Positions 2,370 to 64,000 of a DNA stretch of 64,000 bases are shown here, piece after piece. The stretch is from Octopus bimaculoides (lineage: Eukaryota). The position numbers and the translations under genes were made by a program. Every line of letters begins with the position of its first letter. Positions within the stretch are counted from its first letter, which is position 1. Below the pieces are notes generated by a model. It made no database searches. It had not been told where the DNA came from and saw nothing but the letters and a program-made list of their open reading frames with translations. The stretch lies in the NCBI RefSeq assembly GCF_001194135.2, contig NC_068982.1:48809694-48873693 (forward strand), written 5' to 3'.

Positions 2370-2970
2370 CAGGCATTAGACTGCGGCCATGCTGGGGCAC
2401 CGCTTTGAAGAAGTTTTAGTCGTCTGAATCAACCTCAGTACTATTTTTTTTTAAAGCTTGGTACTTATTCTATCGAATTCTTTTGCTGAACCACCAAGTC
2501 AGAGTGACGGTTGTCAAGCGGTGGTAGGGTACAAACACAGACACAAAGACACATACATACACACACACATATATATACGATGCGCTTCTTTCAGTTTTCG
2601 TCTATCAAATCCACTCACAAGGCTTTGGCCGGCCCAAGGCTATAGTAGAAGATACTTGCTCAAATTGCCATGCAGTAAGACTGAACTCGTAACCATGTGG
2701 CTGGGAAGCAAGCTTCTTATTTCTTTATTGCCCACAGGGGGCTAAACATAGAGGGGACAAACAAGGACACCAGAGGGATTAAGTCGATTACATGGACCCC
2801 AGTGCGTAAGTGGTACTTAATTTATCGACCCCGAAATGATGAAAGGCAAAGTCGACCTCGGCGGAATTTGAACTCAGAAAGTAACGGCAGACGAAATACC
2901 GCTAAGTATTTCGCCCGGCGTGCTAACGATTCTGCCAGCTCGTCACCTTCTTACCACACACCCACGCTTG
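2370..2970 (-). mobile_element. SINE B (tRNA head, CORE-like block, internal microsatellite, tail), split by SINE A
   Basis: Tail at 2370-2550, CA/TA tract, CORE-like and head at 2590-2719, head remainder at 2950-2970. Confidence 0.75.
2720..2949 (-). mobile_element. SINE A, long (Tx1-like) tail, inserted in a SINE B head
   Basis: Full head-to-tail copy. Host AAGCTTCTTA|CCACAC is split, with CTTCTTA on both sides. Confidence 0.85.
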
Positions 2971-3230: not shown

Positions 3231-3436
3231 ATTTCTTTACTGCCCACAAGGGGCTACACACAGAGGGGACAAACAAGGACAGACAAACGGATTAAATCGA
3301 TTATATCGACTCCAGTGCGTAACTGGTACTTATTTAATCGACCCCGAAAGGATGAAAGGCAAAGTCGACCTCGGCGGAATTTGAACTTAGAACGTAACTG
3401 CAGACAAAATACCGCTAAGCATTTCGCCCGGCGTGC
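3231..3436 (-). mobile_element. SINE A, long tail, slightly 5'-truncated
   Basis: Same consensus as 2720-2949. Flanks AATCATGATTCT and AATCACGATTCT are TSD-like. Confidence 0.85.
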
Positions 3437-4009
3437 GAAATCACGATTCTCTTACAGGAAAAGAAAAACATTCTCAGAAGGAATTTCTACACAATTTCTG
3501 CAACTTTTCAGTTTTGACTTTCTTTTGAAAATTCTTTCAAATTAATGTTTTAAACATCTGAGATTAAGATTCTTGAAAAATATTTTCGAAAAAACGTCAA
3601 AACTGAAAAATTATGGAAAAGATCAGGGAGGAGGGATCCCGTCTCCCAATTTTCTGGTTTTATCCGTTGTTTTATTTATTTATTTTTTTTTTCAGAATCG
3701 TAATTTACGATACTTTACACATGAATATCCGAACAATTTAGAGTTTTGGCGTTCTAGATATTTTCCGACTCTATTCTATAAGAATGCGTGTATAACTCCT
3801 TCACACGCACACACATACGCGCGTGCACATGCATATCGATCTAAGGCGATATTAAAAGAAGCATGCCGAAGATGCGGCGTAATGAGATTAAATCCGGAAC
3901 CCTGTCGTTGAATAAATCCATGTAAGTATGCTTGAATGTGTGGATATATATATATATGCATGTATATATATGTATGACGGCGTGGAGGCACAAGAATGGT
4001 TGTGTGACT

Positions 4010-4241
4010 AAGGCGGCTAGCTGGTAGAATCGTTAGCACGCCGGGCGAAATGCTTAGCAGTATTTCGTCTGCCGTTACATTCTGAGTTCAAATTCCGCCG
4101 AGGTCGACTTTGCCTTTCATCCTTTCGGGGTCGATAAATTAAGTACCAGTTACGCACTGGGGTCCATGTAATCGACTTAATCCGTTCGTCTGTCCTTGTT
4201 TGTTCCCTCTATGTTTAGCCCCTTGTGGGCAATAAAGAAAT
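4010..4241 (+). mobile_element. SINE A, long tail, inserted in a SINE B head
   Basis: AAGGCGGC..TGGTAGAATCG (A-box-like), GAGTTCAAATTCC (B-box), tail GGGCAATAAAGAAAT. 15-bp TSD AAGAATGGTTGTGTG at 3992-4006 and 4242-4256. Confidence 0.9.
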
Positions 4242-5520
4242 AAGAATGGTTGTGTGGTTAAGAATTAAGCATTGCAACCACTTTATTCCTGGTTCGATCC
4301 CACTGCAAAGCGCCCTTAAGCAAGTACCTTATACTAAAGCCTCGAGTAAACCATATCTTGTGAGTGGAATTTTATAGACGGAAACTGTACGGAAACCTGC
4401 TGTGTATGTTACACCTGCCTAAAATTTGGTATTGTTTTGTTGAATTTTTACTATTTACCCCAGTCTCACTTTGAAAGTGAAACTAATGTTTTCCCTATGG
4501 TTTTTGGTATCCTTTGAAAGAATCTGGTCAAAAAAAAATGTTAGAAATTACTCGTTCAATATACCTTTCCCTGTAGAAGATAGCCAAAGGCGAGGAATGA
4601 ATCAAATTGCAAAAAAAGTCACAGGAAAAAAAAAATTGTGCTGATCGATGGAGAACTAAGACTGTAGAAGAGTTTCGGTAAATCCCAAGTTGACATTCGT
4701 AAAATCGAATTTGTTTTAGTTTCAGTTTCATTTCAACTAACTCGTGGACACCCTGCTACTCCTTGTTTTATTTTGAATCCCAACGAAATACTTACAGATC
4801 AGCAGATAATCAATGAAATGCATTCAGTTACGACACTGGCTCGATCTTTGTCAGATTCAGCGACTTGTATTGCTTAGTGTGTGTCCACCGTGGATTGTGG
4901 AAGACTGTTCACATGTGCCCAGAGTAAAAACTCTATTCAAAATAAGAATAACATTTTCCCTCACTATTCACTCGCTGTTCACTGTTTTATTGAAGCACTT
5001 CTTGGATGACTATGATTTTACGAACGTCAGATAGGAAATTACCAGAGTTTCTTCATGGCGTCGGTTGGAATATTCGTCTTTGTCATCAACATTAAAAATA
5101 CTGAATATATATGTAAAGGTACGATACTATGTTAAGGTGTTTTCAATCTGTAAATATCATATTCTGTCAATAAATGACTGGACTGAATTGTTTGTTTCGT
5201 TGCCTTCGCTTAAGAAATTGAATAAAAGGTTCTCTCCACTTTATTAATTTACCGTCAATTATTAAAAGATTAAAAGTATTCTTTTGTTTATTACATTAAA
5301 TTGTTTTAGTATTCAAATATTTTTTTTTTACGTAATTCTGGTTTAAGCACTTCATGTAACTCCTCACAGCTTTTTCTTTTTTGAAAATGTCAGAATAACT
5401 TTTGTGAAAATAATGATTAAAAAAAAAAATTATACGTCTTTCCCCATAAATCCGAAAAGTTCCACTGTTTTTCGAATTCAGCAATTATGGGACTATACAT
5501 ACATGCACATACATATATAC

Positions 5521-8359: not shown

Positions 8360-10019
8360 TGAATGAGCAGGAGAAATAGGTGTGAAATTGCTGAAATTCG
8401 GAATCTTCTGTTCTTCGTTTTATTGATTAAATTCACTAGCTATGATTTATTATTTTTTCAAATGCTGCTCCAGACTACTTCATGTCTTTTAATGAGTAAA
8501 TCACGGCTAAGTCCTTAAACCGTAATCATCTGCTATTAGTTAGTACACCATACACACACACACACACACTCACACACACACACACTCACTCAGCTCATTA
8601 ATGATTATTAACTTAGCACTTTGCAGCTTCACTGCATTGGCAAGGCCGTCGATTTACAGAATCAGTGGAGCTCCTGACAAATTACCTTGGGAGAGTCTCT
8701 TCTCTCTCAATGCGTTTTGAGTTCAGTTCTAGCTGATGATTTTGCTTTCCGTTCTTCCGCAATCGATAGAATTAAAGTACCAGTTAAGTACTAAAGCCAA
8801 TACAATCGAATGTTCCTTTTTCTCCTATCTAAATTTGTAGCCCTGTGCCAAAGTGAGTATTCATTTATTAAGCATACATCGATTATGCAGACATATTGAT
8901 CGAAATTATAAATATATAGTCATAACTTAGCATAAACCTGTTTGTTTGACTGACGGGTGTAGACAAACAGATGAATACCCATTCATAAACGCACACATAC
9001 AAATATATTTTTGGAAATGAAGAAGCCTGTATGTGGTCACGCAATTTGTTAGACAAAGCAGCCAATATTTCCGTCATCACACCCTTCCGATTTAAATAAG
9101 AAAAGGACATTAGATTATGTTGCCCCTGATATCTCTAAAATACATGATAGTCACAGTTAAAATGCTTTTAATCATACACTTGCTCTATCGAAGCTGATAT
9201 GTGGCTTAAACAACTATAATATTTATACAAATAAACATAAATGAAACACACTTGCAAATATCTATGTCTCTGTCTGTATAACATTTGGTGTATATGTATT
9301 CTCTCTCGTTCGCACACACACACACACACACACACAGCCACATACTCAACAAATGAACAAGACCTCTACGTAGTCGAAATATGTACTAGAAATAACTGCT
9401 AAATTTCCCAAATATCAGACCCTGTTGTCTCAAATATGTAAAGGACCCATTGTGTAAGGTAGTCCTAAAAAACATCGTTAAAAGCTCAGGTGGTCACATC
9501 TGGGATACCTTTGATTAAATAACTGCAGGAGGTAGGACGGGCGGGCGACCTAGGGCCAAACCGCAACAAATTCGATTTTTATATTAAAATATGAAGCCGT
9601 ACTATTCATACGTATCTCTTCTGTAGTCATAGATTCAGTAAATTTACCAATAAATTTACCTACTTTAACCACGGTATATTACTGGTATGTAATTTAACAA
9701 CTCTTGGGAGAAATATATTACGATGTCGATGTAAGTAATATGTCAATCATAAATTCTAATCAGTTATCGATACATATTGATTATCTTATGTTCACTTTTG
9801 TCTACACTCTAATATATACTCGCAAACTCTGTGTGTGTGCTTGTATTTGTTAACTGATTTAGTCGAACCTAGTACTTATTTTTAAAATCTGGCACTCATT
9901 CTATTGATCATTTTTCTCGAACCGCTACATTACAAGGGTGTAAACAAGCGTGCACCAACTGTGAAGCAACGATGGGGGATGAACACAAAGACACTAAACG
10001 ACGGGCTTGTACAAAGTTT

Positions 10020-15241: not shown

Positions 15242-15595
15242 AGATGATTCTCAACCATTTTTTTTATTATCTGTACATCCCTTTGATTATTATTTTATTC
15301 TGGTGGACCCCGCCCCATAGCTATTCAATGTTTAAAAACTAGTTTCATAGAAACGTTTTTCAAAATTCATATTTTGTTGTTCATATATTAACTTGCGTAA
15401 GTTGAATTATGTAAAACGTTAGAGAAAGAAACCTAACTGATTCTTGCAAGAAATACATTTAAATCAAAACTTTACGTGGACACTTAAATTACTGCTGTAG
15501 ATCCTCAATTTACTATTTTGTTGCGTAACCACCCCCACTCCCCAAATCATATACAGATCGTCAAGGATCATATAGACCCCGATTGAAAACCACTG
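15242..15595. mobile_element. hAT (Charlie-like) MITE
   Basis: Termini GATGATTCTCAACC and GATTGAAAACCACTG. The same family end recurs inverted at about 19595-19675. Confidence 0.55.
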
Positions 15596-22700: not shown

Positions 22701-22879
22701 ACATGTCCTCAGATTCTTTTCTGCTGTAGACACAAGGCCAGAAATTTTTGGAGATGGTCAGTTGATTAGATCGACCCCAGTACGCAAATAGTACTTAATT
22801 TATCGACCCCGAAAGGATGAAAGGCAAAGTCGACCTCGGCGGTATTTGAACTCAGAACATAAAGACAGACGAAATACCG

Positions 22880-24503
22880 ATTTCTTTATTACCCATAAAG
22901 GGCTATACAAAGAATTTTTAAGACATCACAAAACATAAAGACAGTACAAAACGCCAACATAAAATCGGGGTAATTAAAATAAAATGATAATATGCAAGAA
23001 TGAAAAAAGAATGAGGCGCAATGTCCACTCGATCCCCAAAGTCGGGTGGTTACATTTATCCAGTTTTTCACTTTTACGTTCAACGTCATGTAAACATTTT
23101 AACGGTTTTGTAACTCAAAAAATGCAAACTCTCGCGTTACCTTTCTTCCATTAATCAGTTACTTCCGTCTTTATCAACTGCAAATAATCAGTTCTCGGGG
23201 GTGGTGTCTCCACCAACCATACTCGTTTCGTTATTATATTTTCACCAAGTTCTTTTATGTACTCCCAGTAGTTTTCCTCATGTAGCAAAATGCATTTCTC
23301 AGCGCATTTCTCAGGCATTTTCACTCTTATTATTTCTTCTAACCTCTCGACTTTTCTCTCTATTTGCTCGCAATTCTCGTACTTTATCAAAAACCCCTTG
23401 TATTTCACATCTTTCTCCGTTCTCTCCTCCTCTTCTTGTTTATTATTAGTTTCTGGCTTTTTTAAATTTCTTTTTTGTTTTCCGTTGACCGTTTCATGTG
23501 ACTTATTTTTCCTTCGCCTTTTAGGGTTAGTAGCTCCATTTTCGTTCTTCTCCTTTGTTTTCTGTTTCACACATCTGTCTCTTTTATTTCCTCAGTGTGG
23601 TCTACAATTTTTTCTTCTTCTGCTTGTGTTTCTCTTGCTATGGCTGTGTGAACTCATATAGGGGGCATTTGGTCTTCATATGACCTCTCTCCCCGCATAT
23701 ATAACAATTTGGTTTTCTTCCCTCGACTGCAACATTTAACGTTCTCTCATCCTCCACTTCTATCTGGTAGGGAATTTTTCTATGTCCTCGAATGTGGCAA
23801 AAAGCCACATTTCGAGTCCAAATCCCCACCATTTGCACACTTTTGATTTCGCCACTGGTCTCAATTCCGGCTCCTCCTTGGTTGCAGCCAGCACTGTTGC
23901 AATCAACCACTCTGGTTTAATTTCTGGTGTAACTCTGGGAATACGTATTTTCACACTTCTTCTTCCTCTATAACTTGGTAGCAATGCTATTTTTTCACTT
24001 CTTACAATGTTGGTCGCATGCTTGGTTGCCTCTTCTATAGTGGCGAACCTCACCTCAACCGTACCGAACTTTCTTCCTCTGTTGATGTACGTGACTTCAT
24101 TGACAATTTCACTCAAGCACTCTTCGATTTCCTCTTCCGTCACCATTTCAATTTTACAGGGTTCAACAGCCTGTGTACGATACACAACTGTCCTCAGAAT
24201 TTTGTTTTCTTTAGTCTCTTTTGGGGGACACAATTTGTATGAGTCTCCCTCAACTTCTATCAAATTCCTGCTTCTGGTCACCTCCTCCATATCCAACTTG
24301 GTTTCCAGCGGCACTGGCTTCCTCACCGCTGTGGCCCTGGCGTAGCTCTCCATACTGGAGACACTACCACTTGCCATAGCTGGGAAAAAATGCAGCAGCT
24401 CACGTGAAACGTAACCGTAATAATTCCACAAAATCACAATTATTTACCGAGACACTTTTCACAAAGTAACACAACAGTATTCACAATAATTCACAGAGCC
24501 GTT
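22880..24503 (-). mobile_element. ORF1-only (half-L1/HAL1-like) non-LTR retroelement, copy 1
   Basis: About 125-nt 5' leader, degenerate ORF1, about 220-nt 3' UTR ending AGCCCTTTATGGGTAATAAAGAAAT. Junctions are ATACCG and ATACCA (6-bp TSD-like, one mismatch) inside a SINE A head. No ORF2 sequence. Second copy at 60647-62143. Confidence 0.85.
23099..24377 (-). pseudogene. L1/Tx1-type ORF1 protein (RRM-like regions, CCHC zinc knuckle, charged linker, C-terminal domain), frameshifted
   Basis: Pieces in ORFs 23760-24437, 23638-23910 and 23151-23570. N-terminal MAS..SYARA, RRM-like TYINRGRKFGTVEVRFATIEEA, knuckle CYICGERGHMKTKCP. Several frameshifts and a stop. Confidence 0.8.
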
Positions 24504-24829
24504 ATACCACGAAGCAATTCGACCGGCATACTAACGTTTCTGCCAGCTCGCCGCCTTACATGTCCACAGACTGACACCCTAATTCACTGAAATGTTCGTA
24601 TTGGAGCTTCCAACGCGAATACCAAGCAGTACAGCATGTCATTTCCAAACTTCTGGCAGAGTGAATTGCGTCATGGTGCTGATTTTCTCACAGACGGTGC
24701 CCAACTAAAACTTCTATACTGTATAGTAGACAAAATCAAAAGCAAACAATGCGCAAAATTAAAATATAAAATGGCGACAATTTACCCATCGCACCCTGTG
24801 TGTGTATGTGTGTGTGTATATATATATAT

Positions 24830-33255: not shown

Positions 33256-33609
33256 GCGTGTGCGCGTGCGTGTGTGTGTGAATATGGATATTTATTTTTT
33301 TGCACGTGCATGTGGCGGGGTTAAAATCCAAGCTAGTTCCCATGGAGCACATCTGCTCATTTCAGTATTCCATTTCTGTATGTAGTTGTTATATTTATGT
33401 AAGGTATGCACTAGATTAAAATCCTGGGAATATTGTTTGCAGATTATTTAAAAATTAAAACAGGTGGTTGGGATTTTTTCTTTTTTTGGTATTATTTATT
33501 CACCATTACACCTGTTTTATTTGCTAACAGGAATTACAAAATTACACATGTCAGATAATCTTACATTATTGACATTTGACGGATGTTTGTCCTCGTCTTG
33601 TTTGTTGTT

Positions 33610-33656
33610 AACACAACGTTTCGGCTGATAAACCCTCCAGCCTTCATCAGGTTGTC
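33610..33656 (-). ncRNA. Minimal hammerhead ribozyme motif
   Basis: GACAAC-CTGATGA-A-GGCTG-(10-nt loop)-CAGCC-GAAA-CGTT-GTGTT. Conserved core, 5-bp helix II, palindromic AACGTT in place of helix III, helix I with a bulge. Confidence 0.7.
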
Positions 33657-33918
33657 TTGGGGAAGTTTCGAACCTGCGTTCTCATTCCTAAGGTATTTTT
33701 CAATGTTATTATTATTATCATTATTCAGGTCACTGCCTGGCAGTGACCTGAATAATGATAATAATAATAATAATAATAGCAACAACAACAACAATAATAA
33801 TAACAATAACAATAATAACAATAATAATAATAACAACAATAATAATAATAATAATAATGATAATAATAATATTGAAAAATACCTTAGGAATAAGAACCCA
33901 GGTTCGAAATTTCCCCAA

Positions 33919-33962
33919 GACAACCTGATGAAGGCTGGAGGGTATATCAGCCGAAACGTATT
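33919..33962 (+). ncRNA. Hammerhead ribozyme motif, 3' helix I strand partly deleted
   Basis: CTGATGA (33925-33931)-A-GGCTG-loop-CAGCC-GAAA-CGTA. Mirror copy of 33610-33656. Confidence 0.5.
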
Positions 33963-34404
33963 AACAACAAACAAATATCTGTCAAATGTAAATAATGTAC
34001 ATAATTCCTCATCTCTTCAATATAGAACTAACTGTAAGATAAACTTGTAAGAAATTTCACATATGTACTCTTTTCATTGCTTTAAGAAATGATGGAAAAA
34101 CAAAAAAATTATGTGAGGGTTGAATACTATTTTGAAAGATTCATAGCAGGGAATTTTCACCATGCACTTCAAAGGGCTGGCAAAATAGATGCCATAGTAG
34201 ATGATGTTAGAACCATATTATGTGACACAGAGAGTGAACCAGGATACCATGCGTTAACTGAACAGTAGTTGAAGTTATTGTTGGTGACAGTGGAGATAGT
34301 TATAGTTGAGAAAATGTATGAGAGACTTAAACATTAGAGAGACCTTGATAACATTTTGTACTTTGACTCATTAACAGAAATCAAAACCTCAACAATAATG
34401 GTTT

Positions 34405-37179: not shown

Positions 37180-37989
37180 TTGAGCATTGATTGTTGCATT
37201 AGGTGGTAACAATTCAAAGTGAATTACTCCTTTGCAATCCCACCAGATAGAGAGAAGAATCTTTTTTCCCATGAAGTCCCCTTCTTGGTTGTGGTTGAGC
37301 GTTATCCCTTTTACCAAGTCACTGCTTACGACGTTTAACATTTCGACAGAAGATCCATTTTTGTCACCAGTCTATCCAAAAAGGGTGAAATGAGTTCACG
37401 AGAATGGAGAGAAGAGCAGATGTCACCTTGGGATTTGTGGTTACTCTCAGGCAATTCATGAGGCACCCATTTTCCAAGTTTAGGAACCTTTCCAAGTTGT
37501 TGAAGATGACGATGCACAGTTGTGTAGTTTGAACTAAGCTTTATTGCCAATTCTTCAACTGATAATGCAGGATTTTCTTCAAGTAATGCCTCAAGGAGAT
37601 TATCAACAAACTCAACTGGACGTCCTGTTCGATCTTCATCTTCAAGGCATAAATCTCCACTTCAGAATTTTGCAAGCCATCTTCTGCAAGTTCTTTCATT
37701 CAAGCATTCTTTCCCATAAACTGAGTGCATGTTTCGAGTCGATTCGGCTGCAGTGTTTCCGTTTTTGTACTCATAAAGCATTATGTGCCTCAAATGCTCT
37801 TTGGATACTTCAATGATAGAAAGGGTTTTAATGAAAGATATTTTAATTTTATTATTCTGTAAAATAATATTTAAATGTACACAAATGCATAAAAATAATT
37901 TTAAATTCCATTAGACATTCTAAAATACTATTAAATTTCATTCAATTTTAAAAAAGATAAAATTGGACAGAACTTATGGGATAACCTGA
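37180..37989 (-). pseudogene. mariner transposon remnant with 5' end
   Basis: HIMLYEYKNGNTAA..EDEDRTGRPV..LGKWVPHEL..KILLSIWWDCKGVIHFELLP. Putative 5' TIR beside TA near 37989. Confidence 0.88.
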
Positions 37990-42440: not shown

Positions 42441-42579
42441 TATAGAAGAATATATATATCCATATATATAAGTGTGTGAATTAAACTATGCTTGACAACT
42501 AGCTTTGGTATGTTTATATCTTTGTGACTTGACCGTTTGGCAAAAGAGACTGATAGAATAGGCACTAGGCTTAAAAAAA

Positions 42580-43175
42580 CACTCCTACAGAATACTCTAT
42601 CTAAATACGATCTGGACGACCCAATGCGGTTGCTCCATGTCCACATTGGCACATTCGAGTGGTCCAGTCAGACAGTTGGAAACGTCTGAGCAGGTCTTTG
42701 AGGCATTTTCATCCCCTCCTATTACTATCTGTGCCCACGTAGTGGAGATGCTTGTCCGGGGTAGCGTCCCAATCCCCCACTAAATGTAAAAGTCGAGACG
42801 TTCCCAGGAAAACCTCTAGACGTCGAAAGAAATCTGGCCAACCTGTTAAGGACGGTGCATAAACTGCTATCAGTTTAGGCACTGCACACCCATTACTACC
42901 CACCCATTACTGCCATCGACATCTAAGACGACCAGCCTATCCTCCGGGTCTAGGAAAATTGCTCTTACTTTGAGGTCTGGACTCTTCCGAAGAAGCGCTG
43001 CAGCAGACACGGAGAAAAATAAATGTCGAAATGTCCGCCGAACATGTGCTGGAGGGCCCGCGAACTATGGAGTCTGGTCTCGCTGATGGCTATGATATGC
43101 AGATTTTGTGACTTGATGTCATTGTTTCCAAGGCGAGCCCAAGCCACGTACATTTATACTGCCTATTTTGAGCAT
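42580..43175 (-). pseudogene. Tx1/L1-clade LINE ORF2 N-terminal apurinic-like endonuclease (APE) fragment
   Basis: Across frames: MLKIGSINVRGLGSPWKQ, HIIAISETRL, LIAVYAP, LVGDWDA (GDFN-like), WTWSNRIGSSRSYLDRVF (SRID-like). These are APE motifs in the expected order. Confidence 0.85.
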
Positions 43176-43322
43176 GTTCCTATCTAAAGTTGGTTTTTAC
43201 ACACGAAAGGAAGAGAAAAAGAGAGAAAGAGAGAGAGTGAGAGAGAGAGAGGGAGTCACTGTCCGAAAGTTGTTTGTCCTTCACTTCACAGTCTTCTCCC
43301 AGAAGATTTTTGTATAGTTTTA

Positions 43323-43333
43323 GACAGATGGAC

Positions 43334-43364
<31 letters not shown>

Positions 43365-44242
43365 CAGAGAGAGAGAGATAGACAGAGAGAGAGAGAGATA
43401 GACAGAGAGAGAGAGATAGACAGAGAGAGAGAGATAGACAGAGAGAGAGAGATAGACAGAGAGACAGTGAGACAGAGAGAGAGAGATAGACAGACAGACA
43501 GTGAGACAGACAGACAGTGAGACAGACAGAGACAGTGAGACAGACAGACAGACAGTGAGACAGACAGACAGACAGTGAGACAGACAGACAGACAGTGAGA
43601 CAGACAGACAGACAGTGAGACAGACAGANNNNNNNNNNNNNNNNNNNNNNNNNNNNNNNNNNNNNNNNNNNNNNNNNNNNNNNNNNNNNNNNNNNNNNNN
43701 NNNNNNNNNNNNNNNNNNNNNNNNNNNNNNNNNNNNNNNNNNNNNNNNNNNNNNNNNNNNNNNNNNNNNNNNNNNNNNNNNNNNNNNNNNNNNNNNNNNN
43801 NNNNNNNNNNNNNNNNNNNNNNNNNNNNNNNNNNNNNNNNNNNNNNNNNNNNNNNNNNNNNNNNNNNNNNNNNNNNNNNNNNNNNNNNNNNNNNNNNNNN
43901 NNNNNNNNNNNNNNNNNNNNNNNNNNNNNNNNNNNNNNNNNNNNNNNNNNNNNNNNNNNNNNNNNNNNNNNNNNNNNNNNNNNNNNNNNNNNNNNNNNNN
44001 NNNNNNNNNNNNNNNNNNNNNNNNNNNNNNNNAGACAGACAGTGAGATAGACAGACAGTGAGATAGACAGACAGAGAGATAGACAGACAGAGAGATAGAC
44101 AGACAGAGAGATAGACAGACAGAGAGATAGACAGACAGAGAGATAGACAGACAGAGAGATAGACAGACAGAGAGATAGATTGACAGACAGACAGATAGAC
44201 AGAAATAGTTAGACAGAGAGATAGATAGACAGAGAGATAGAT
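43323..44242. repeat. Compound (GATA)/(GACA)/(GA) microsatellite with 16-18-mer higher-order units and a gap
   Basis: Direct inspection. Source of the spurious LSV/SLC ORFs. Confidence 0.95.
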
Positions 44243-44808
44243 AAGCTTTATTAGCCACACAGGGCCGAACGCAGAGGGACAAAATGCAATGTAGAGATTT
44301 TTTTTTTTCGTAAAAAAAAAAAAATTCTATCAAAAGCGATCGTGTAAACAAGCGATCAGAACTGATCGTGTATCAGAGAAAATATCATAAATGTAAAAAA
44401 CAGATTAGGTTTATGCGTGGAAAGAAAAGCCTACGGAAAAGAACACGGTAACCTCAGGCACGGAGGGAAAAACACGAGAGCAAAGTACTCTCTCTCTTTT
44501 CGATTTACAGGATCATGCTCAAAGTGATTTTGTCATTCACGCGTACCATCTTTGCTACATTCACCCACTTTTCATTGAAACTTTCACGAGACAAAACTTG
44601 CCTCTCTATTCTCACTTTCCTTTTTAAGTGGTACTTGAAAAAGTTGATTAGCGATTGGCCAGAGAGGAAAGTGTTTGTCTGTAAACCTTTTGTTCGAGTC
44701 CACCACCACACATTCTTTCACCATGGCTACTAGGCGGACTCATCCCACACGCAACAGCAGCCGCTCAGCATAAGCCCACGGGTCCGAAATGGTTGGACAC
44801 TGCACGAC
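44243..44808 (-). mobile_element. Tx1/L1-clade LINE 3' end (ORF2 C-terminus plus 3' UTR)
   Basis: VVQCPTISDPWAYAERLL and WWTRTKGLQTNTFLSGQSLINFFKYHLKRKVRIER..MIL* (stop at 44505). UTR ends GGCCCTGTGTGGCTAATAAAGCTT abutting a TATC/TGTC microsatellite. Confidence 0.75.
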
Positions 44809-48041: not shown

Positions 48042-48311
48042 TTATAAGATTACTTTTCTTGCTTTTCTCTCTGCAAAGTCTTTTAGAATTTTATCTATAT
48101 CCAAACTCCTGCTAATTTCACATTCAATGGACATAATTGCCGAACTGTTCAAACGTTCTTGTTGAATTGATGATTTCAAGTAAGTTTTGATCAGTTTCAG
48201 ATTGGAAAAAGTTCTTTCTCCAGATGCCACAGTCACTGGGATTGCCAAGAAAATCCGGAGAGCGTTTAATAAAAAAATTTGGAAATGCGGCAGACCTGCT
48301 GTTGCAAGCAA
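48042..48311 (-). pseudogene. hAT transposase C-terminal dimerisation domain
   Basis: ALRIFLAIPVTVASGERTFSNLKLIKTYLKSSIQQERLNSSAIMSIE matches the hATC motif (P.T.AS.ERSFS.LK.IK..LRS). Confidence 0.9.
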
Positions 48312-48535
48312 GGAATTGAAGCATTTTCTTGGGGATTTTAATCTTTCATGACGGAATTGGCTTTAGTGCCTCCATTTCCTCAAAACATGTATCCATCCAT
48401 ATCAAACAGTTTATCTAATGCACCTTTCTCCTTTTAAGATTCAGCCTTCTTTGCCTTGGCCACAGCCCTCTTCTTACTGTCACCTAAATATGTTCTGCCG
48501 ATATCTCTTAGTCTTTTACTCATGTCTACAAAAAC

Positions 48536-49909: not shown

Positions 49910-50100
49910 TGGTTGAATCGTTACCGCACCGGAAAAATACCTAGTGGCATTCTATCGACTTTACGTTCTGAGTTCAAATGCCTCAGAGGTCGACTTTGCT
50001 TTCGATCCCTTTGGGACTCAAAATAAGTATCACTTATGCACTGGGGTTGATGTAATCGACTTAATCACTGCCACAAAATTACTGGCCTTGTGCCAAAATT
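49910..50100 (+). mobile_element. SINE A, short tail, diverged
   Basis: TTCTGAGTTCAAAT B-box, central block and tail GGCCTTGTGCC. Confidence 0.75.
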
Positions 50101-60331: not shown

Positions 60332-60646
60332 GTGTATACAAAATGTATGCATGTGTATATATCCATCCCCAAAGGATGAAAGTCAAAGTCAACCCCGACA
60401 AAATTTGAACTCACAATGTAATGAGGGGCGAAATGCCACTAAGCATTTTGCCCGGCATGCTAACGATTCTTTTTTTTCTTTTTTCCTACACTAGGCACAA
60501 GACCCAAAATTTTAGGGGAGGGGGCCAGTCGATTAGATCAACTCCAGTACGCAACTGGTACTTAATTTATCGATCCCGAAAGGATGAAAGGCAAAGTCGA
60601 CTTCGGCGGAATTTGAACTCAGAACGTAAAGACAGGCGAAATACCG

Positions 60647-62143
60647 ATTTCTTTATTACCCATAAAGGGCTATACAAAGAATTTTTAAGACATCACAAAA
60701 CATAAAGGCAGTACAAAACGCAAACATAAAATCGGGGTAATTAAAATAAAATGATAATATGCAAGAATGAAAAAAATGAGGCGAAACGTCCACTCGATCC
60801 CCGAAGTTGGGTGGTTACATTTATCCAGTTTTTCACTTTTACGTTCAACGTCATGTAAACATTTTAACGGTTTTGTAACTCAAAAAATTCAAATACTTGC
60901 GTTACCTTTCTTCCATTAATCATTGTTACATCCGTCCTTAACAACTGCAAATAATCAGTTCTCGGGGGTGGTGTCTCCACCAGCCATACCCGTTTCGTTA
61001 ATATATTTTCACCAAGTTCTTGTATGCGCTCCCAGCATCTTTCCTCACATATCAAAATGCATTTTTCAGCACATTTCTCTGGCATTTTCACTCTTATTAT
61101 TTCTCCCAACCTCTCGACTTTTCTCTCCATCTGCTCGCAATTCTTGTACTTTATCAAAAGCCCCTTGTATTTCACATCTTTATCCGTTCCGCCCTCCTCT
61201 TCTTGTACATTATTAGTTTCTGGCTTTTTTATCTCTTTTTTTGTTTTCTGTTGACCGTTCCTTTGACTTATTTTTCCTTCGCTTTTTAGGGTTAGTAGCT
61301 CCATTTTCGTTCTTCTCCTTTGTTTTCTCTGTTTCACACTTCTGTCTCTCTTTTATTTCCTCAGTGTGGTCTACAATTTTTTCTTCCTCTGTTTGTGCTT
61401 TCTCTTGCTGTGGCTGTGTGAACTCATATAGGGGGCATTTGGNNNNNNNNNNNNNNNNNNNNNNNNNNNNNNNNNNNNNNNNNNNNNNNNNNNNNNNNNN
61501 NNNNNNNNNNNNNNNNNNNNNNNNNNNNNNNNNNNNNNNNNNNNNNNNNNNNNNNNNNNNNNNNNNNNNNNNNNNNNNNNNNNNNNNNNNNNNCTTGGTA
61601 GTAATGCTATTTTTTCACTTCTTACAATGTTGGTTGCATGCTTGGTTGCCTCTTCTATAGTGGCGAACTTCACCTCAACCGTACCGAACTTTCTTCCTCT
61701 GTTGATGTACGTGGCTTCATTGACAATTTCACCCAGGCACTCCTCGATTTCCTCTTCCGTCACCATTTCAATTTTACAGGGTTCGACAGCCTGTGTACGA
61801 TACACAACTGTCCTCAGATTTTTTTCTTCTTTAGTCTCTTTTGGGAGACACAATTTGTATGAGTCTCCCTCAACTTCTATCAAATTCCTGCTTCTGGTCA
61901 CCTCCTCCATATCCAACTTGATTAACTTGGTTTCCAGCGGCACTGGCTTCCTCAGCGCAGTGGCCTTGGCGTAGCTCTCCATACTGGAGACACTCCTATT
62001 TGCCATAGCTGGGAAAAAATGCAGCAGCTCACGTGAAACGTGACAGTAATAATTCCACAAACTTCACAATTATTTACCGAGACAGTTGTCACAAAGTAAC
62101 ACAACCGTATTCACAATAATTCACAATAATTCACAGAGCCGTT
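60647..62143 (-). mobile_element. ORF1-only (half-L1/HAL1-like) non-LTR retroelement, copy 2
   Basis: Colinear with 22880-24503 (roughly 90% identical by eye), same ends, exact ATACCG duplication at 60641-60646 and 62144-62149. Internal N-gap at 61443-61594. Confidence 0.85.
60864..62006 (-). pseudogene. L1/Tx1-type ORF1 protein, copy 2 (gap covers most of the knuckle; at least one frameshift)
   Basis: ATG at 62006 (MANRSVSSMESYAKA). Near-identical translation to copy 1 with an in-frame 9-nt insertion. KCPLYEFTQPQQ visible after the gap. Stop at 60864-60866. Confidence 0.8.
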
Positions 62144-64000
62144 ATACCGCGAAGCAGTTCGACTGGCGTGCTAACGTTTATTTTTTCTTTATTGCCAACA
62201 AGGGGCTAAACATAGAGGGGACAAACATGAACAGACAAAGGGATTAAGTCGATTAGATCGACCCCAGTGTGTAACTGGTATTTATTTAATCGACCCCGAA
62301 AGTATGAAAGGCAAAGTCGACTTCGGTGGAATTTGAACTCAGAACGTAACGGCAGACGAAATAAGGCTATGCATTTTGCCCGGTGTGCTAACGTTTCTGC
62401 CAGCTCGCCGCCTTGACAGATGATGCTGACTATAATGCGATTGCACGCACGCGCATATACAATACATGTGGTAACTGACAGAATAAAGAGAAGAAATATG
62501 AAAAGTAAACGAAATTTAAAATCAAACCATTGAAGAAACAATGTTTTTATTCAGTTCGAGTGCCGGCAAGCAGTTTAATATTTGGAAGCTGCACTGAATT
62601 TTAATGTTAACTAAAAGCGTTGCCTTAAAAAATTCTTAGTAAATGAAAATGTAAATGCATTTGTTGTGAAAATGTAACCGCGAAACAAATTCCATAGTAA
62701 AGGTCTTCTCACGTTTTAGTATAAACGAACGTGTCAAATGAAATAGCACACATCTACATTTAACTCAACGCTGCTTAGATTGCCTCTAGTTAAATAAAAT
62801 TGCATACTGATGGTTAAATGATATTTTCATTATGTGTGTGTGTTTCTGTTCGCGCGTGCATAAAAATGAAAGATTGTGTACACACACATACATATGTATA
62901 TATATATATACACTTACATACATATATGTAATTATATATATAATTATATACACTTATATACATATATATATATATAATTATATATATATATATATATATA
63001 TNNNNNNNNNNNNNNNNNNNNNNNNNNNNNNNNNNNNNNNNNNNNNNNNNNNNNNNNNNNNNNNNNNNNNNNNNNNNNNNNNNNNNNNNNNNNNNNNNNN
63101 NNNNNNNNNNNNNNNNNNNNNNNNNNNNNNNNNNNNNNNNNNNNNNNNNNNNNNNNNNNNNNNNNNNNNNNNNNNNNNNNNNNNNNNNNNNNNNNNNNNN
63201 NNNNNNNNNNNNNNNNNNNNNNNNNNNNNNNNNNNNNNNNNNNNNNNNNNNNNNNNNNNNNNNNNNNNNNNNNNNNNNNNNNNNNNNNNNNNNNNNNNNN
63301 NNNNNNNNNNNNNNNNNNNNNNNNNNNNNNNNNNNNNNNNNNNNNNNNNNNNNNNNNNNNNNNNNNNNNNNNNNNNNNNNNNNNNNNNNNNNNNNNNNNN
63401 NNNNNNNNNNNNNNNNNNNNNNNNNNNNNNNNNNNNNNNNNNNNNNNNNNNNNNNNNNNNNNNNNNNNNNNNNNNNNNNNNNNNNNNNNNNNNNNNNNNN
63501 NNNTTTCTGTAAACAACTACGATCAATTACTGAAACACATATTTACGAAGTTCATAAATTTAAATATTCTGTACAAGATAGTTTTTAACGTGCTTTTATT
63601 TATACGATTTTTGGGCGTTCCATGTTCATCTCATTCATTCTTTGCATTGCTCTCTCTCTCTCATTCACACACTCCAGGTTTGATTTCGTTCCGAACTCGC
63701 ACACTTCGTTAATTTCCGTAAATAAATTTTCTATTATTTTTTTTTTTTTTTGGCACGCCGTGTTCAGCTCTATGTATTCGTAGTGAGTCACACACGCACA
63801 TGTGTGTGAGTGAAGGGGTGTGTTGTGCTGTCTACGTACATACATAAATACATATGCATACATCTTTTCTGTGTGTATATCTGCACGTGTGTGTGAGAGA
63901 GACAGACAGACAGAGAGATGTTTCAGTGACTCTCTCTCTCACACATACGTACAAGAAATGTATGACTATTTATGTATGTACGTATAATTGTCGACACACC

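What the first reader, a model, noticed from the sequence alone, without database searches (positions are those of the whole stretch)
44243..44290. One 3' stem-loop plus AATAAAG tail shared by a Tx1-like LINE, the ORF1-only element and long-tail SINE A
Seen: LINE end TTTGTCCCTCTGCGTTCGGCCCTGTGTGGCTAATAAAG; SINE A consensus end TTTGTCCCCTCTATGTTTAGCCCCTTGTGGGCAATAAAGAAAT; ORF1-element end TTTGTATAGCCCTTTATGGGTAATAAAGAAAT (27 of the last 32 nt identical to the SINE). All can form a 3-4-bp GCC(C)/GG(G)Y stem with a 5-6-nt loop just before AATAAA. Known: many SINEs borrow a partner LINE 3' end for recognition by its reverse transcriptase; tail sharing is less typical of mammalian L1. Inference: a three-tier system of an autonomous Tx1 LINE and two different non-autonomous passengers using one recognition signal.
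Basis: partly seen in the sequence, partly recalled or inferred. Interest (0 to 1): 0.85.

Follow-up and report, generated by a model that had tools for sequence, protein, structure and literature searches.

The report
Shared hairpin tail of octopus retrotransposons
In this stretch of octopus genome, a long jumping gene of the L1/Tx1 type, a derivative of it that keeps only its first gene, and the very abundant short SINE repeats all end in the same small RNA hairpin and A-rich tip, which is the classic sign that short elements borrow the long element's copying enzyme; this kind of partnership is well known but has rarely been reported for this group of LINEs.

Summary
The window is Octopus bimaculoides DNA. 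On the minus strand, 44246-44283 is the 3' end of a 5'-truncated LINE. Its ORF2 C-terminus (44508-44808) matches octopod LINEs that carry ORF1, an APE endonuclease, RT and zf-RVT. The closest solved structure is human L1 ORF2p. Placement in the L1/Tx1 group is well supported; "Tx1" specifically was not resolved.

The tail motif recurs at four SINE A ends and at both ORF1-only element ends, against zero expected by chance.

The core signal is a 4-bp G/C stem capped by a CUUGU loop, followed by an A-rich ...GAAAU terminus. The same hairpin closes two further SINE tail types (B and C), LINE tails in O. sinensis and Argonauta, and Argonauta SINEs. The stems differ through compensatory changes: 3 of 4 pairs covary, and 90% of cells are paired versus 26-52% in slid controls.

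The best reading is a stringent-type LINE/SINE partnership. There is one caveat. All three ORF1-only copies examined sit inside a SINE with identical junctions and were copied as a composite. Their own tail is therefore an internal relic, not the current terminus.

This is a new member of a known kind, of moderate interest.

The parts
44246..44283 (-). 3'-terminal tail module of the LINE fragment: TTTGTCCCTCTGCGTTC GGCC CTGTGT GGCT AATAAAG
   Evidence: 77% identity over 39 nt to SINE A tails
44253..44266 (-). Hairpin of the LINE tail: stem GGCC/GGCU (G.U, G-C, C-G, C-G) with a 6-nt loop CUGUGU. This is the consensus CUUGU plus one inserted base.
   Evidence: MFE hairpin; compared with LINE tails of L003, L004 and L006
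44246..44808 (-). 5'-truncated LINE copy of the L1/Tx1 group. ORF2 C-terminus is 44508-44808, stop codon 44505-44507, 3' UTR 44246-44504.
   Evidence: tblastn; DNA alignment to the O. sinensis LINE 3' end. No RT or EN domain further upstream.
4010..4241 (+). Full-length SINE A. Hairpin GCCC CTTGT GGGC at 4218-4230, terminus AATAAAGAAAT at 4231-4241. Flanked by a 15-bp target-site duplication AAGAATGGTTGTGTG (3992-4006 and 4242-4256).
2719..2949 (-). SINE A copy (hairpin GCCC CCTGT GGGC)
3231..3436 (-). 5'-truncated SINE A copy (tail ...GGGCAGTAAAGAAAT)
62183..62414 (-). SINE A copy (hairpin decayed to GCCC CTTGT TGGC). It abuts the 5'-truncated composite b.
22880..24495 (-). ORF1-only element, copy a. 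Frameshifted ORF1 of about 420 aa with a CCHC knuckle, a 3' UTR of about 270 nt, hairpin GCCC TTTAT GGGT at 22891-22903, and end AATAAAGAAAT at 22880-22890.
   Evidence: no ORF2 remnant
22713..24557 (-). Composite a = SINE head (about 60 nt) + ORF1-only element + rest of a B-type SINE, ending ...TGGC CTTGT GTCT ACAGCAGAAAAGAAT. Flanked by a 12-bp TSD CTG(T/A)GGACATGT (24558-24569 and 22701-22712).
60647..62125 (-). ORF1-only element, copy b (N gap 61443-61593). Hairpin at 60658-60670. It lies inside composite b (about 60466-62179), which is 5'-truncated in the SINE head.
50083..50095 (+). Hairpin of a C-type SINE tail: TGGC CTTGT GCCA, followed by AAATTTCAAAT
42521..42995 (-). Separate fragment of a related LINE (APE endonuclease part of ORF2). 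It is not contiguous with the 44246 tail.
   Evidence: tblastn (58-89% identity to the L003 endonuclease region)

Best explanation
The motif is the 3'-terminal recognition module of an octopod LINE lineage of the L1/Tx1 group. The LINE has an ORF1 with a CCHC knuckle and an ORF2 with APE endonuclease, RT and a C-terminal zf-RVT.

The module is about 40-50 nt long. It consists of a U/G-rich stretch (UUUGUCCC...UCUNUGU), a 4-bp G/C stem capped by a conserved CUUGU loop, and an A-rich terminus ending in GAAAU (AAUAAAGAAAU in SINE A and the ORF1-only element).

Shown here:
- The LINEs, the tRNA/CORE-type SINEs (tail types A, B and C) and the ORF1-only LINE derivative all carry this hairpin at their 3' ends.
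- Stem sequences differ between families through compensatory changes, while the loop is kept.
- Copies end exactly at ...GAAAT next to target-site duplications, with no poly(A).

Inferred:
- The LINE ORF2 protein recognises the hairpin ('stringent' template recognition). It starts target-primed reverse transcription at the GAAAU end.
- SINE RNAs carrying the module are therefore copied in trans.
- AAUAAAG is mainly the 3' strand of a possible lower helix with UCUNUGU and part of the priming end, rather than a working poly(A) signal.

The ORF1-only element is an ORF2-less LINE derivative, comparable to HAL1. It once inserted into a SINE. It has since spread as a SINE-head / ORF1 / SINE-tail composite that uses the downstream SINE tail (which carries the same hairpin) as its real 3' end.
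For: Recurrence at element ends:
- 6-7 copies in the window against 0-0.6 expected.
- The N4-CTTGT-N4' hairpin occurs nowhere else in the window.

LINE identity:
- Window 44508-44808 matches the ORF2 C-terminus (E 1e-23 to 1e-25).
- O. sinensis L003 shows ORF1, Exo_endo_phos, YADD RT and zf-RVT, then a 3' end ...AGCC CTTGT GGCC AATAAAAAGAAT.
- L004 ends GGCC CTTGT GGCC AATAAAAGAAATC.
- Argonauta L006 has two LINE 3' UTR copies with the hairpin.
- PDB best hits are L1 ORF2p at 174 bits, versus R2 at 88 bits.

SINE partnership:
- SINE A versus LINE tail is 77% over 39 nt.
- Argonauta SINE tail TTCTGTGTTCGGCCCTTGTGGCTAATAGAGAAATC is nearly identical to Argonauta LINE tail TTCTGTGTCGGCCCTTGTGGCTAATAAAGAAATC.

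Structure:
- Stems are GCCC/GGGC (A), AGGC/GCCU (B), UGGC/GCCA (C), GGCC/GGCY (LINEs) and GCCC/GGGU (ORF1 element).
- The test set was 32 SINE tails found through body homology and anchored without using complementarity, plus 3 LINE tails and the ORF1 element. In it, 89.6% of cells pair, versus 26-52% when slid. No shuffle of 500 reached the observed pairing or covariation score. 3 of 4 pairs carry double changes.
- RNAalifold independently predicts the 4-bp stem.
- Lower helix: it is predicted for SINE A, the ORF1 element and Argonauta tails (z -1.6 to -3.4). The number of U between C and A (1, 2, 3) tracks the number of A between AAU and G (3, 4, 5) in SINE A, L004 and L003 (read from the sequences).

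Precise termini:
- 15-bp TSD directly after ...GAAAT at 4242.
- 12-bp TSD around composite a.

ORF1 element:
- 31% identity, E 4e-30, to the L003 LINE ORF1.
- A related ORF1 sits directly upstream of an EN/RT ORF2 on L002.
- No ORF2 remnant.
- Identical SINE junctions in three copies.
Against: - No experiment has been done. Recognition by ORF2p is inferred by analogy.
- A 4-bp hairpin is thermodynamically unremarkable. z-scores are about 0 for the window LINE, L003, L004 and SINE B and C tails.
- The lower helix is not predicted for several LINE tails. Its two strands are conserved as sequence, so covariation there is weak.
- No full-length O. bimaculoides LINE with the SINE A-type stem (GCCC/GGGC), or with the B or C stems, was found.
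- Only about 170 kb of octopod DNA was examined. The tails of other LINE clades present in octopus (RTE, Dong-R4, CR1) were not compared.
- The covariation cells come from roughly 4-5 independent lineages, not 36 independent events.
- The window LINE copy lacks the final AAAT and has a 6-nt loop.
Confidence: 0.75

Rival explanations
1. The tails are related by descent or recombination, but the SINEs are actually mobilised by a different LINE clade known in octopus (RTE, Dong-R4 or CR1). On this view the L1/Tx1-type LINE merely shares, or itself acquired, the module.
For: Other LINE clades are abundant and recently active in octopus (PMC13282606, PMC9115989). Their 3' ends were not examined here. 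SINE B and C tails share only the hairpin and the GAAAU-like end with the LINE tails found.
Against: The hairpin tail was found on L1/Tx1-type LINE 3' UTRs in three octopod assemblies and one metagenome contig. In Argonauta, LINE and SINE tails match over about 35 nt. SINE A matches the LINE over 39 nt, including the upstream TTTGTCCC block.
Confidence: 0.12
2. The motif is primarily a transcript 3'-end signal: AAUAAA as a polyadenylation hexamer, with an upstream hairpin as an auxiliary or terminator element. It would be kept in all three elements because each needs 3'-end formation, not because of reverse-transcriptase recognition.
For: AATAAA is the canonical hexamer. L1-type LINEs normally use a poly(A) signal.
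Against: Copies end 4-8 nt after the hexamer, with no poly(A) and with the TSD starting at once. SINE B and C tails, one Argonauta LINE tail (AAGAAAGAAAT) and Argonauta SINEs (AATAGAGAAAT) lack AATAAA yet keep the hairpin. The bare heptamer is not enriched. SINEs of this type are presumably pol III transcripts, which do not use AAUAAA (established knowledge).
Confidence: 0.06
3. Chance resemblance of short, compositionally biased sequences.
For: The stem is only 4 bp. The flanks are A/T-rich. Single-sequence folding z-scores are often near zero.
Against: Zero matches in shuffles for the 34-nt consensus. The motif always lies at element 3' ends. It recurs in O. sinensis and Argonauta. Covariation is far above the slid and shuffled controls.
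Confidence: 0.01

Closest known systems
Stringent-type SINE/LINE pairs with a common 3' tail (Ohshima and Okada; for example eel UnaSINE1/UnaL2 and tortoise SINE/CR1; reviewed in PMC3747384)
   Same: Similarity is confined to the last 40-50 nt. There is a short stem-loop with a conserved loop and a variable, compensated stem. Termini are precise and lack poly(A). The SINE is a tRNA-type element.
   Different: The partner here belongs to the L1/Tx1 group rather than L2, CR1 or RTE. No functional test exists. At least three SINE tail types share the hairpin but differ in the flanking sequence.
L1-clade stringent pairs: maize ZmSINE2/3 with LINE1-1_ZM, and Chlamydomonas SINEX-3_CR with L1-1_CR (Ohshima 2012, PMC3472496)
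   Same: An L1-group LINE has a conserved 3' hairpin that is shared with SINEs and supported by compensatory mutations. That survey found only 3 SINEs with L1 tails among 58 pairs.
   Different: Those cases are in plants and algae. This one is in an animal (a mollusc). The loop and flank sequences are unrelated, and the plant and algal elements often still end in poly(A).
Tx1-Mar LINEs and SINEU in crocodilians (Kojima 2015, PMC4494074)
   Same: A Tx1-clade LINE is proposed as the mobiliser of a SINE family.
   Different: That inference rests on shared target preference, and SINEU ends in poly(A). Here it rests on a shared 3' hairpin tail, and no common specific target was shown.
HAL1 'half-L1' and other ORF1-only or ORF2-deleted LINE derivatives (Bao and Jurka 2010, cited in PMC4494074)
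   Same: ORF1 is retained, ORF2 is absent, and the 3' end is LINE-type.
   Different: All three copies seen are embedded in a SINE at identical junctions. They spread as a composite whose real 3' end is a SINE tail.
Composite retroposons such as SVA, or SINE2-1_ACar (a tRNA fused to the 5' and 3' parts of Vingi; cited in PMC4494074)
   Same: A chimera of SINE-derived and LINE-derived parts that is mobilised in trans.
   Different: Here the LINE part carries a complete ORF1 and lies inside the SINE, splitting its presumed A and B boxes.
[quoted passage not shown]
   Same: The SINE bodies in the window are of the abundant octopus tRNA/CORE type. This rests on the literature and on my reading of the sequence.
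   Different: In the papers held here I found no description of their partner LINE or of the CUUGU hairpin tail.

Membership tests
SINE/LINE pair with a common 3' tail (stringent recognition type) | Sequence similarity between SINE and LINE restricted to the 3'-terminal tens of nucleotides | tested here: met
   Only the last 34-39 nt match between the LINE fragment, SINE A and the ORF1 element. Argonauta LINE_b and Argonauta SINE tails match over about 35 nt.
SINE/LINE pair with a common 3' tail (stringent recognition type) | The partner is a LINE encoding endonuclease and reverse transcriptase | tested here: met
   Relatives L003, L002 and P0158 have Exo_endo_phos, RVT_1 or YADD, and zf-RVT. 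The window copy keeps only the ORF2 C-terminus.
SINE/LINE pair with a common 3' tail (stringent recognition type) | Conserved 3' stem-loop supported by compensatory changes | tested here: met
   3 of 4 stem pairs carry double changes. 89.6% of cells pair versus 26-52% slid, and 0/500 shuffles reach the observed values.
SINE/LINE pair with a common 3' tail (stringent recognition type) | Copies end precisely at the tail, flanked by target-site duplications, without poly(A) | tested here: met
   SINE A 4010-4241 has a 15-bp TSD starting right after GAAAT. Composite a has a 12-bp TSD.
SINE/LINE pair with a common 3' tail (stringent recognition type) | Retrotransposition depends on the tail or hairpin (functional test) | not testable with these tools
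   Needs a retrotransposition assay.
Tx1 clade of non-LTR retrotransposons | RT-domain phylogeny groups the element with Xenopus Tx1L, Keno, Kibi and similar references rather than with L1 proper | not testable with these tools
   No named reference RT sequences were available. Database hits carry no clade names. The only support is indirect: the literature lists 'L1-Tx1' as the L1-group LINE type in octopus (PMC13282606, PMC8967140).
Tx1 clade of non-LTR retrotransposons | L1-superfamily architecture: ORF1, then an ORF2 with APE endonuclease, RT and a C-terminal Cys-rich domain | tested here: met
   L003 and L002. The best solved-structure match is human L1 ORF2p at 174 bits, versus R2 at 88 bits.
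Tx1 clade of non-LTR retrotransposons | Target-sequence-specific insertion (common in the clade) | tested here: inconclusive
   The L003 LINE lies in an (ATT)n tract on both sides, and the L004 LINE is followed by (ATT)n. The window copy is followed by a (GATA/GAGA)n tract, and the Argonauta copies by other A/T-rich DNA.
ORF1-only LINE derivative (HAL1-like) | ORF1 homologous to the ORF1 of an autonomous LINE | tested here: met
   tblastn of L003 ORF1 against the window gives E 4e-30 at 31-48% identity, and L002 ORF1 gives E 4e-11. There are 415 homologues, none fused to RT.
ORF1-only LINE derivative (HAL1-like) | No ORF2, but a LINE-type 3' end | tested here: met
   No ORF2 match in 22880-24495 or 60647-62125. 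The tail has the hairpin and AATAAAGAAAT.
ORF1-only LINE derivative (HAL1-like) | Copies amplified with the element's own 5' and 3' termini | tested here: not met
   All three copies have the same SINE head upstream and the same junction AATAAAGAAAT|CGGTATTTCG downstream. The TSD flanks the composite, not the ORF1 element.
tRNA-derived CORE-SINE | Recognisable tRNA-derived head | tested here: inconclusive
   ARAGORN and Rfam find no tRNA in the window or in the SINE A head. A- and B-box-like motifs are seen by eye only.

The most novel reading that the evidence does not exclude
An animal LINE lineage of the L1/Tx1 group, conserved from Octopus to Argonauta, uses stringent recognition of a CUUGU-loop hairpin. 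It is the engine behind the octopod-specific explosion of CORE-type SINEs. Different SINE tail types (A, B, C) would track LINE subfamilies whose stems have co-evolved with them. An ORF1-only derivative survives by riding inside a SINE.
Probability: 0.5. Interest if true: 0.65.

Novelty: new member of a known kind. Interest (0 to 1): 0.5.

Why it matters
SINEs make up a very large share of octopus repeats (about 40% of TE content in PMC8967140; 11.6% of the O. vulgaris genome in PMC13282606). Their expansion is a hallmark of octopus genomes, yet I found no described partner LINE in the papers held here.

Tail sharing with an L1-group LINE is rare. Ohshima's survey found 3 such SINEs among 58 pairs, none in animals (PMC3472496). 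It bears on whether the ancestor of L1-type elements recognised its template stringently.

The hairpin gives a concrete, mutable target: the loop CUUGU and a 4-bp stem with natural compensatory variants. This can be used for retrotransposition assays and for classifying octopus SINE subfamilies by partner.

Tried and rejected
1. I first concluded there was no LINE at 44252. Pfam found nothing in three frames over 3.3 kb upstream, and RT-motif regexes found nothing in the window. This was wrong for the last 565 bp. The ORF2 C-terminus has no Pfam model, and it was recognised only after fetching an O. sinensis LINE.
2. Looking for a parent LINE through the ORF1-element proteins failed. The word-indexed search gave only 5 octopus ORF1-only proteins. 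The C-terminal 95 aa gave 1 hit. Several exact look-ups returned nothing.
3. The metagenome scan with the degenerate 17-mer GSCCCTTGTGGSYAATA returned 120 stretches. None had the tail context, so all were chance hits.
4. PDB sequence search with ORF1 gave only a weak retroviral zinc-knuckle similarity.
5. Rfam and ARAGORN found no tRNA or other known RNA family in the window or the SINE head.
6. Single-sequence folding significance was not convincing for a 4-bp hairpin. I rely on covariation instead.
7. MAFFT and RNAalifold did not recover the lower helix, because of indels between the LINE tails. It remains a hypothesis.
8. L007 ends before the tail. The L008 tail is decayed. The L002 3' region (unknown marine eukaryote) shows only a loose resemblance.

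Full report
**What the window is.** The window is AT-rich eukaryotic DNA (37% GC) with several N gaps. Every close homologue of its ORF1-like protein comes from Octopus bimaculoides. A related locus was fetched from the O. bimaculoides chromosome assembly (L001).

**Checking the observation.** The three quoted sequences are all present.
- The "LINE end" is the reverse complement of 44246-44283.
- SINE A ends lie at 4241(+), 2719(-), 3231(-) and 62183(-).
- ORF1-element ends lie at 22880(-) and 60647(-).
- A 34-nt consensus (TCTNTGTNTAGCCCNTTNTGGGNAATAAAGAAAT, up to 3 mismatches) hits six times, against 0.00 expected.
- A looser hairpin-plus-AATAAAG pattern hits seven times against 0.64 expected, including the LINE copy.
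- The bare heptamer is not enriched.
BLAST gives 29/34 for ORF1 element versus SINE A, and 77% over 39 nt for LINE versus SINE A.

**Is 44252 really a LINE end?** I first thought not. There is no ORF of 90 aa or more, no Pfam domain in 3.3 kb upstream, and no RT motif anywhere in the window. The answer came from outside the window.
- An exhaustive HMMER search with ORF1 found 415 relatives.
- One of them led to an O. sinensis locus (L003). It holds a nearly complete LINE: ORF1 (615 aa), then an ORF2 with Exo_endo_phos, a YADD RT and zf-RVT.
- Its ORF2 C-terminus matches window 44526-44808(-) at 59% identity, E 1e-23. P0158 matches 44508-44717 at 66%. The DNA aligns up to the stop codon.
- The window therefore holds the last 565 bp or so of a LINE: ORF2 C-terminus, stop at 44505-44507, and a 259-nt 3' UTR.
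- A second, separate endonuclease fragment lies at 42521-42995(-).
- Among solved structures, the ORF2 is closest to human L1 ORF2p (174 bits) and far less close to R2 (88 bits).
- Published octopus repeat annotations list RTE, Dong-R4, CR1, L1-Tx1, Hero and R2 (PMC13282606). By architecture, this element fits only L1-Tx1.
- I could not run a clade phylogeny, so "Tx1" remains probable but not shown.

**LINE tails elsewhere.**
- L003 ends ...TTTGTCCCTTTATGTTT[16-nt insert]C AGCC CTTGT GGCC AATAAAAAGAAT.
- A metagenome contig carrying a 77%-identical ORF2 ends GGCC CTTGT GGCC AATAAAAGAAATC.
- Argonauta hians L006 has a LINE ending AGCC AGGT GGCT AAGAAAGAAAT. About 360 bp downstream is a 5'-truncated copy of the same 3' UTR, ending GGCC CTTGT GGCT AATAAAGAAATC.
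- The tail is therefore an old, conserved property of this LINE lineage.

**The SINEs.**
- SINE A (4010-4241) carries a 15-bp target-site duplication that begins immediately after ...AATAAAGAAAT. That sequence is therefore its true 3' end.
- I sampled SINEs by homology to the SINE body only (39 copies in the window, L001, L003 and L006). This shows three tail types in Octopus:
  - A: ...GCCC CTTGT GGGC AATAAAGAAAT
  - B, the commonest: ...AAAATTTC AGGC CTTGT GCCT ATAGTAGAAAAGAAT
  - C: ...TGGC CTTGT GCCA AAATTTGAAAC
- Argonauta SINEs end GGCC CTTGT GGCT AATAGAGAAATC. This is almost the same as the Argonauta LINE tail.

**The hairpin.**
- All tails share a 4-bp stem and the loop CUUGU. The stems differ in a complementary way.
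- The test alignment was anchored without using complementarity: 32 SINE tails, 3 LINE tails and the ORF1 element (A8).
- In it, 89.6% of cells pair, versus 26-52% when the 3' side is slid. No shuffle of 500 reaches the observed pairing or covariation score. Three of four pairs carry changes on both sides.
- Smaller sets agree, and RNAalifold predicts the same stem.
- These cells represent roughly four or five lineages, not independent events.
- Thermodynamically, a 4-bp hairpin is not special; z-scores range from near 0 to -3.4.
- A lower helix pairing UCUNUGU(U) with AAUAAAGA is predicted for SINE A, the ORF1 element and Argonauta tails. It fits a correlated length change: one, two or three U opposite three, four or five A in SINE A, L004 and L003.
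- It is not predicted for several LINE tails, so I treat it as a hypothesis.

**The ORF1-only element.**
- It encodes a protein of about 420 aa whose only Pfam hit is a CCHC knuckle. This protein is homologous to LINE ORF1s that sit directly upstream of EN/RT ORF2s.
- It has no ORF2 remnant.
- All three copies (window a and b, and L001 9599-10936) are preceded by the first 60 nt or so of a SINE. All are followed, at the identical junction AATAAAGAAAT|CGGTATTTCG, by the rest of a SINE. There is a likely duplicated target, GGTAT..CG..TCTG.
- Copy a is flanked as a whole by a 12-bp TSD.
- The element therefore inserted once into a SINE, and the composite then spread. It ends in a B-type tail in the window and in an A-type tail in L001.
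- Its own tail documents its LINE ancestry. It is not the present terminus.

**Mechanism.**
- Shown: the common module, its position at exact termini next to TSDs, loop conservation with stem covariation, and the coding capacity of the LINE relatives.
- Inferred: the LINE ORF2 protein recognises the hairpin and primes at the GAAAU end, so SINE RNAs are copied in trans. This is inferred by analogy with stringent-type LINEs (PMC3747384, PMC3472496).
- The poly(A)-signal reading is unlikely. Copies have no poly(A). The TSD starts 4 nt after the hexamer. Several family members lack AAUAAA.

**Comparison and novelty.**
- This is the classic SINE/LINE "common tail" relationship.
- What is unusual is the partner clade. 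Ohshima's survey found only three SINEs with L1-clade tails among 58 pairs, in maize and Chlamydomonas (PMC3472496). The Tx1-SINEU link in crocodilians rests on shared targets, not tails (PMC4494074).
- I found no paper in the held library describing the partner LINE of the octopus SINEs. Repbase could not be consulted.
- I rate it a new member of a known kind, with interest of about 0.5.

**Limits.**
- Only about 170 kb of octopod DNA was examined.
- The tails of other LINE clades were not compared.
- No LINE with the exact SINE A, B or C stems was found.
- No age profiles or experiments are available.

Noticed in passing
window 22713-24557(-), about 60466-62179(-); L001 9540-11112: The ORF1-only element is always nested in a SINE at identical junctions and spread as a composite of SINE head, ORF1 element and SINE tail. 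Copy a has a 12-bp TSD. The L001 copy ends in an A-type tail and the window copies in a B-type tail.
   Followed up: yes
window 62179-62183 and 60466-60470; L001 about 11113 and about 36124: SINE tails are repeatedly followed directly by a 5'-truncated SINE. These start at the same head position (..ACGTTAGCAC / CGTTAGCA), with AGAA microhomology to the tail end, and form head-to-tail chains. This suggests insertion next to existing tails (an AAGAA-like target), microhomology-mediated 5' joining, or template switching.
   Followed up: partly
window 42521-42995(-): A separate fragment of a related LINE: the APE endonuclease part of ORF2, 58-89% identical to the O. sinensis LINE. No RT follows it.
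   Followed up: partly
L003 about 9720-9790 and 15347-15385; L004 2020-2105: The O. sinensis LINE lies in an (ATT)n microsatellite on both sides, and the L004 LINE is followed by (ATT)n. This may indicate microsatellite-specific insertion, as in some Tx1-clade or Dong elements. The window copy does not show it.
   Followed up: no
window 44296-44322(-): The LINE 3' UTR contains a T13-ACG-A11 inverted repeat about 30 nt upstream of the tail module. The homologous region of the O. sinensis LINE has only short T and A runs.
   Followed up: no
window 43321-44241, with N gap 43629-44032: A long (GATA/GACA/GAGA)n microsatellite begins immediately after the LINE 3' end and spans an assembly gap.
   Followed up: no
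window 48045-48362(-): An ORF fragment with a hAT-family C-terminal dimerisation domain (Pfam Dimer_Tnp_hAT, E 7e-9). It is a DNA-transposon remnant.
   Followed up: partly
window 37338-37661(-): An ORF fragment with a helix-turn-helix region (weak generic HTH Pfam hits). By eye it resembles the N-terminus of a mariner-type transposase.
   Followed up: partly
protein P0161: A protein deposited as 'MAG: zinc-binding domain-containing protein [Herbaspirillum sp.]' is 67% identical to the octopus LINE ORF2 C-terminal region. Several JGI and ENA metagenome contigs (L004, L005, L008) also carry this LINE. Cephalopod DNA contamination of metagenome bins is the likely cause.
   Followed up: no
L002 (Tara Oceans contig, 6159 bp): Two LINE copies in tandem from an unknown marine eukaryote. 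An ORF2 end with zf-RVT is followed by an 861-aa ORF1 related to the octopus ORF1, then an EN/RT ORF2. The inter-copy region has a GGCCTTGAGCC hairpin and AAATAAAAG, which resembles the octopod tail only loosely.
   Followed up: partly
L006 5100-5400(-), 13900-14260(-): Argonauta has a second SINE family with a different head and body but the same tail module (..TTATCTGCCCTTGTTTG...TGTGTC GGCC CTTGT GGCM RATRGAGAAATC). The module is therefore shared across unrelated SINE bodies.
   Followed up: partly
window 33564-34050: Long complementary ORFs made of an (AAT/AAC)n-type trinucleotide repeat (poly-Asn on one strand, poly-Leu on the other), flanked by an inverted duplication. This is a simple-repeat artefact, not a gene.
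   Followed up: no
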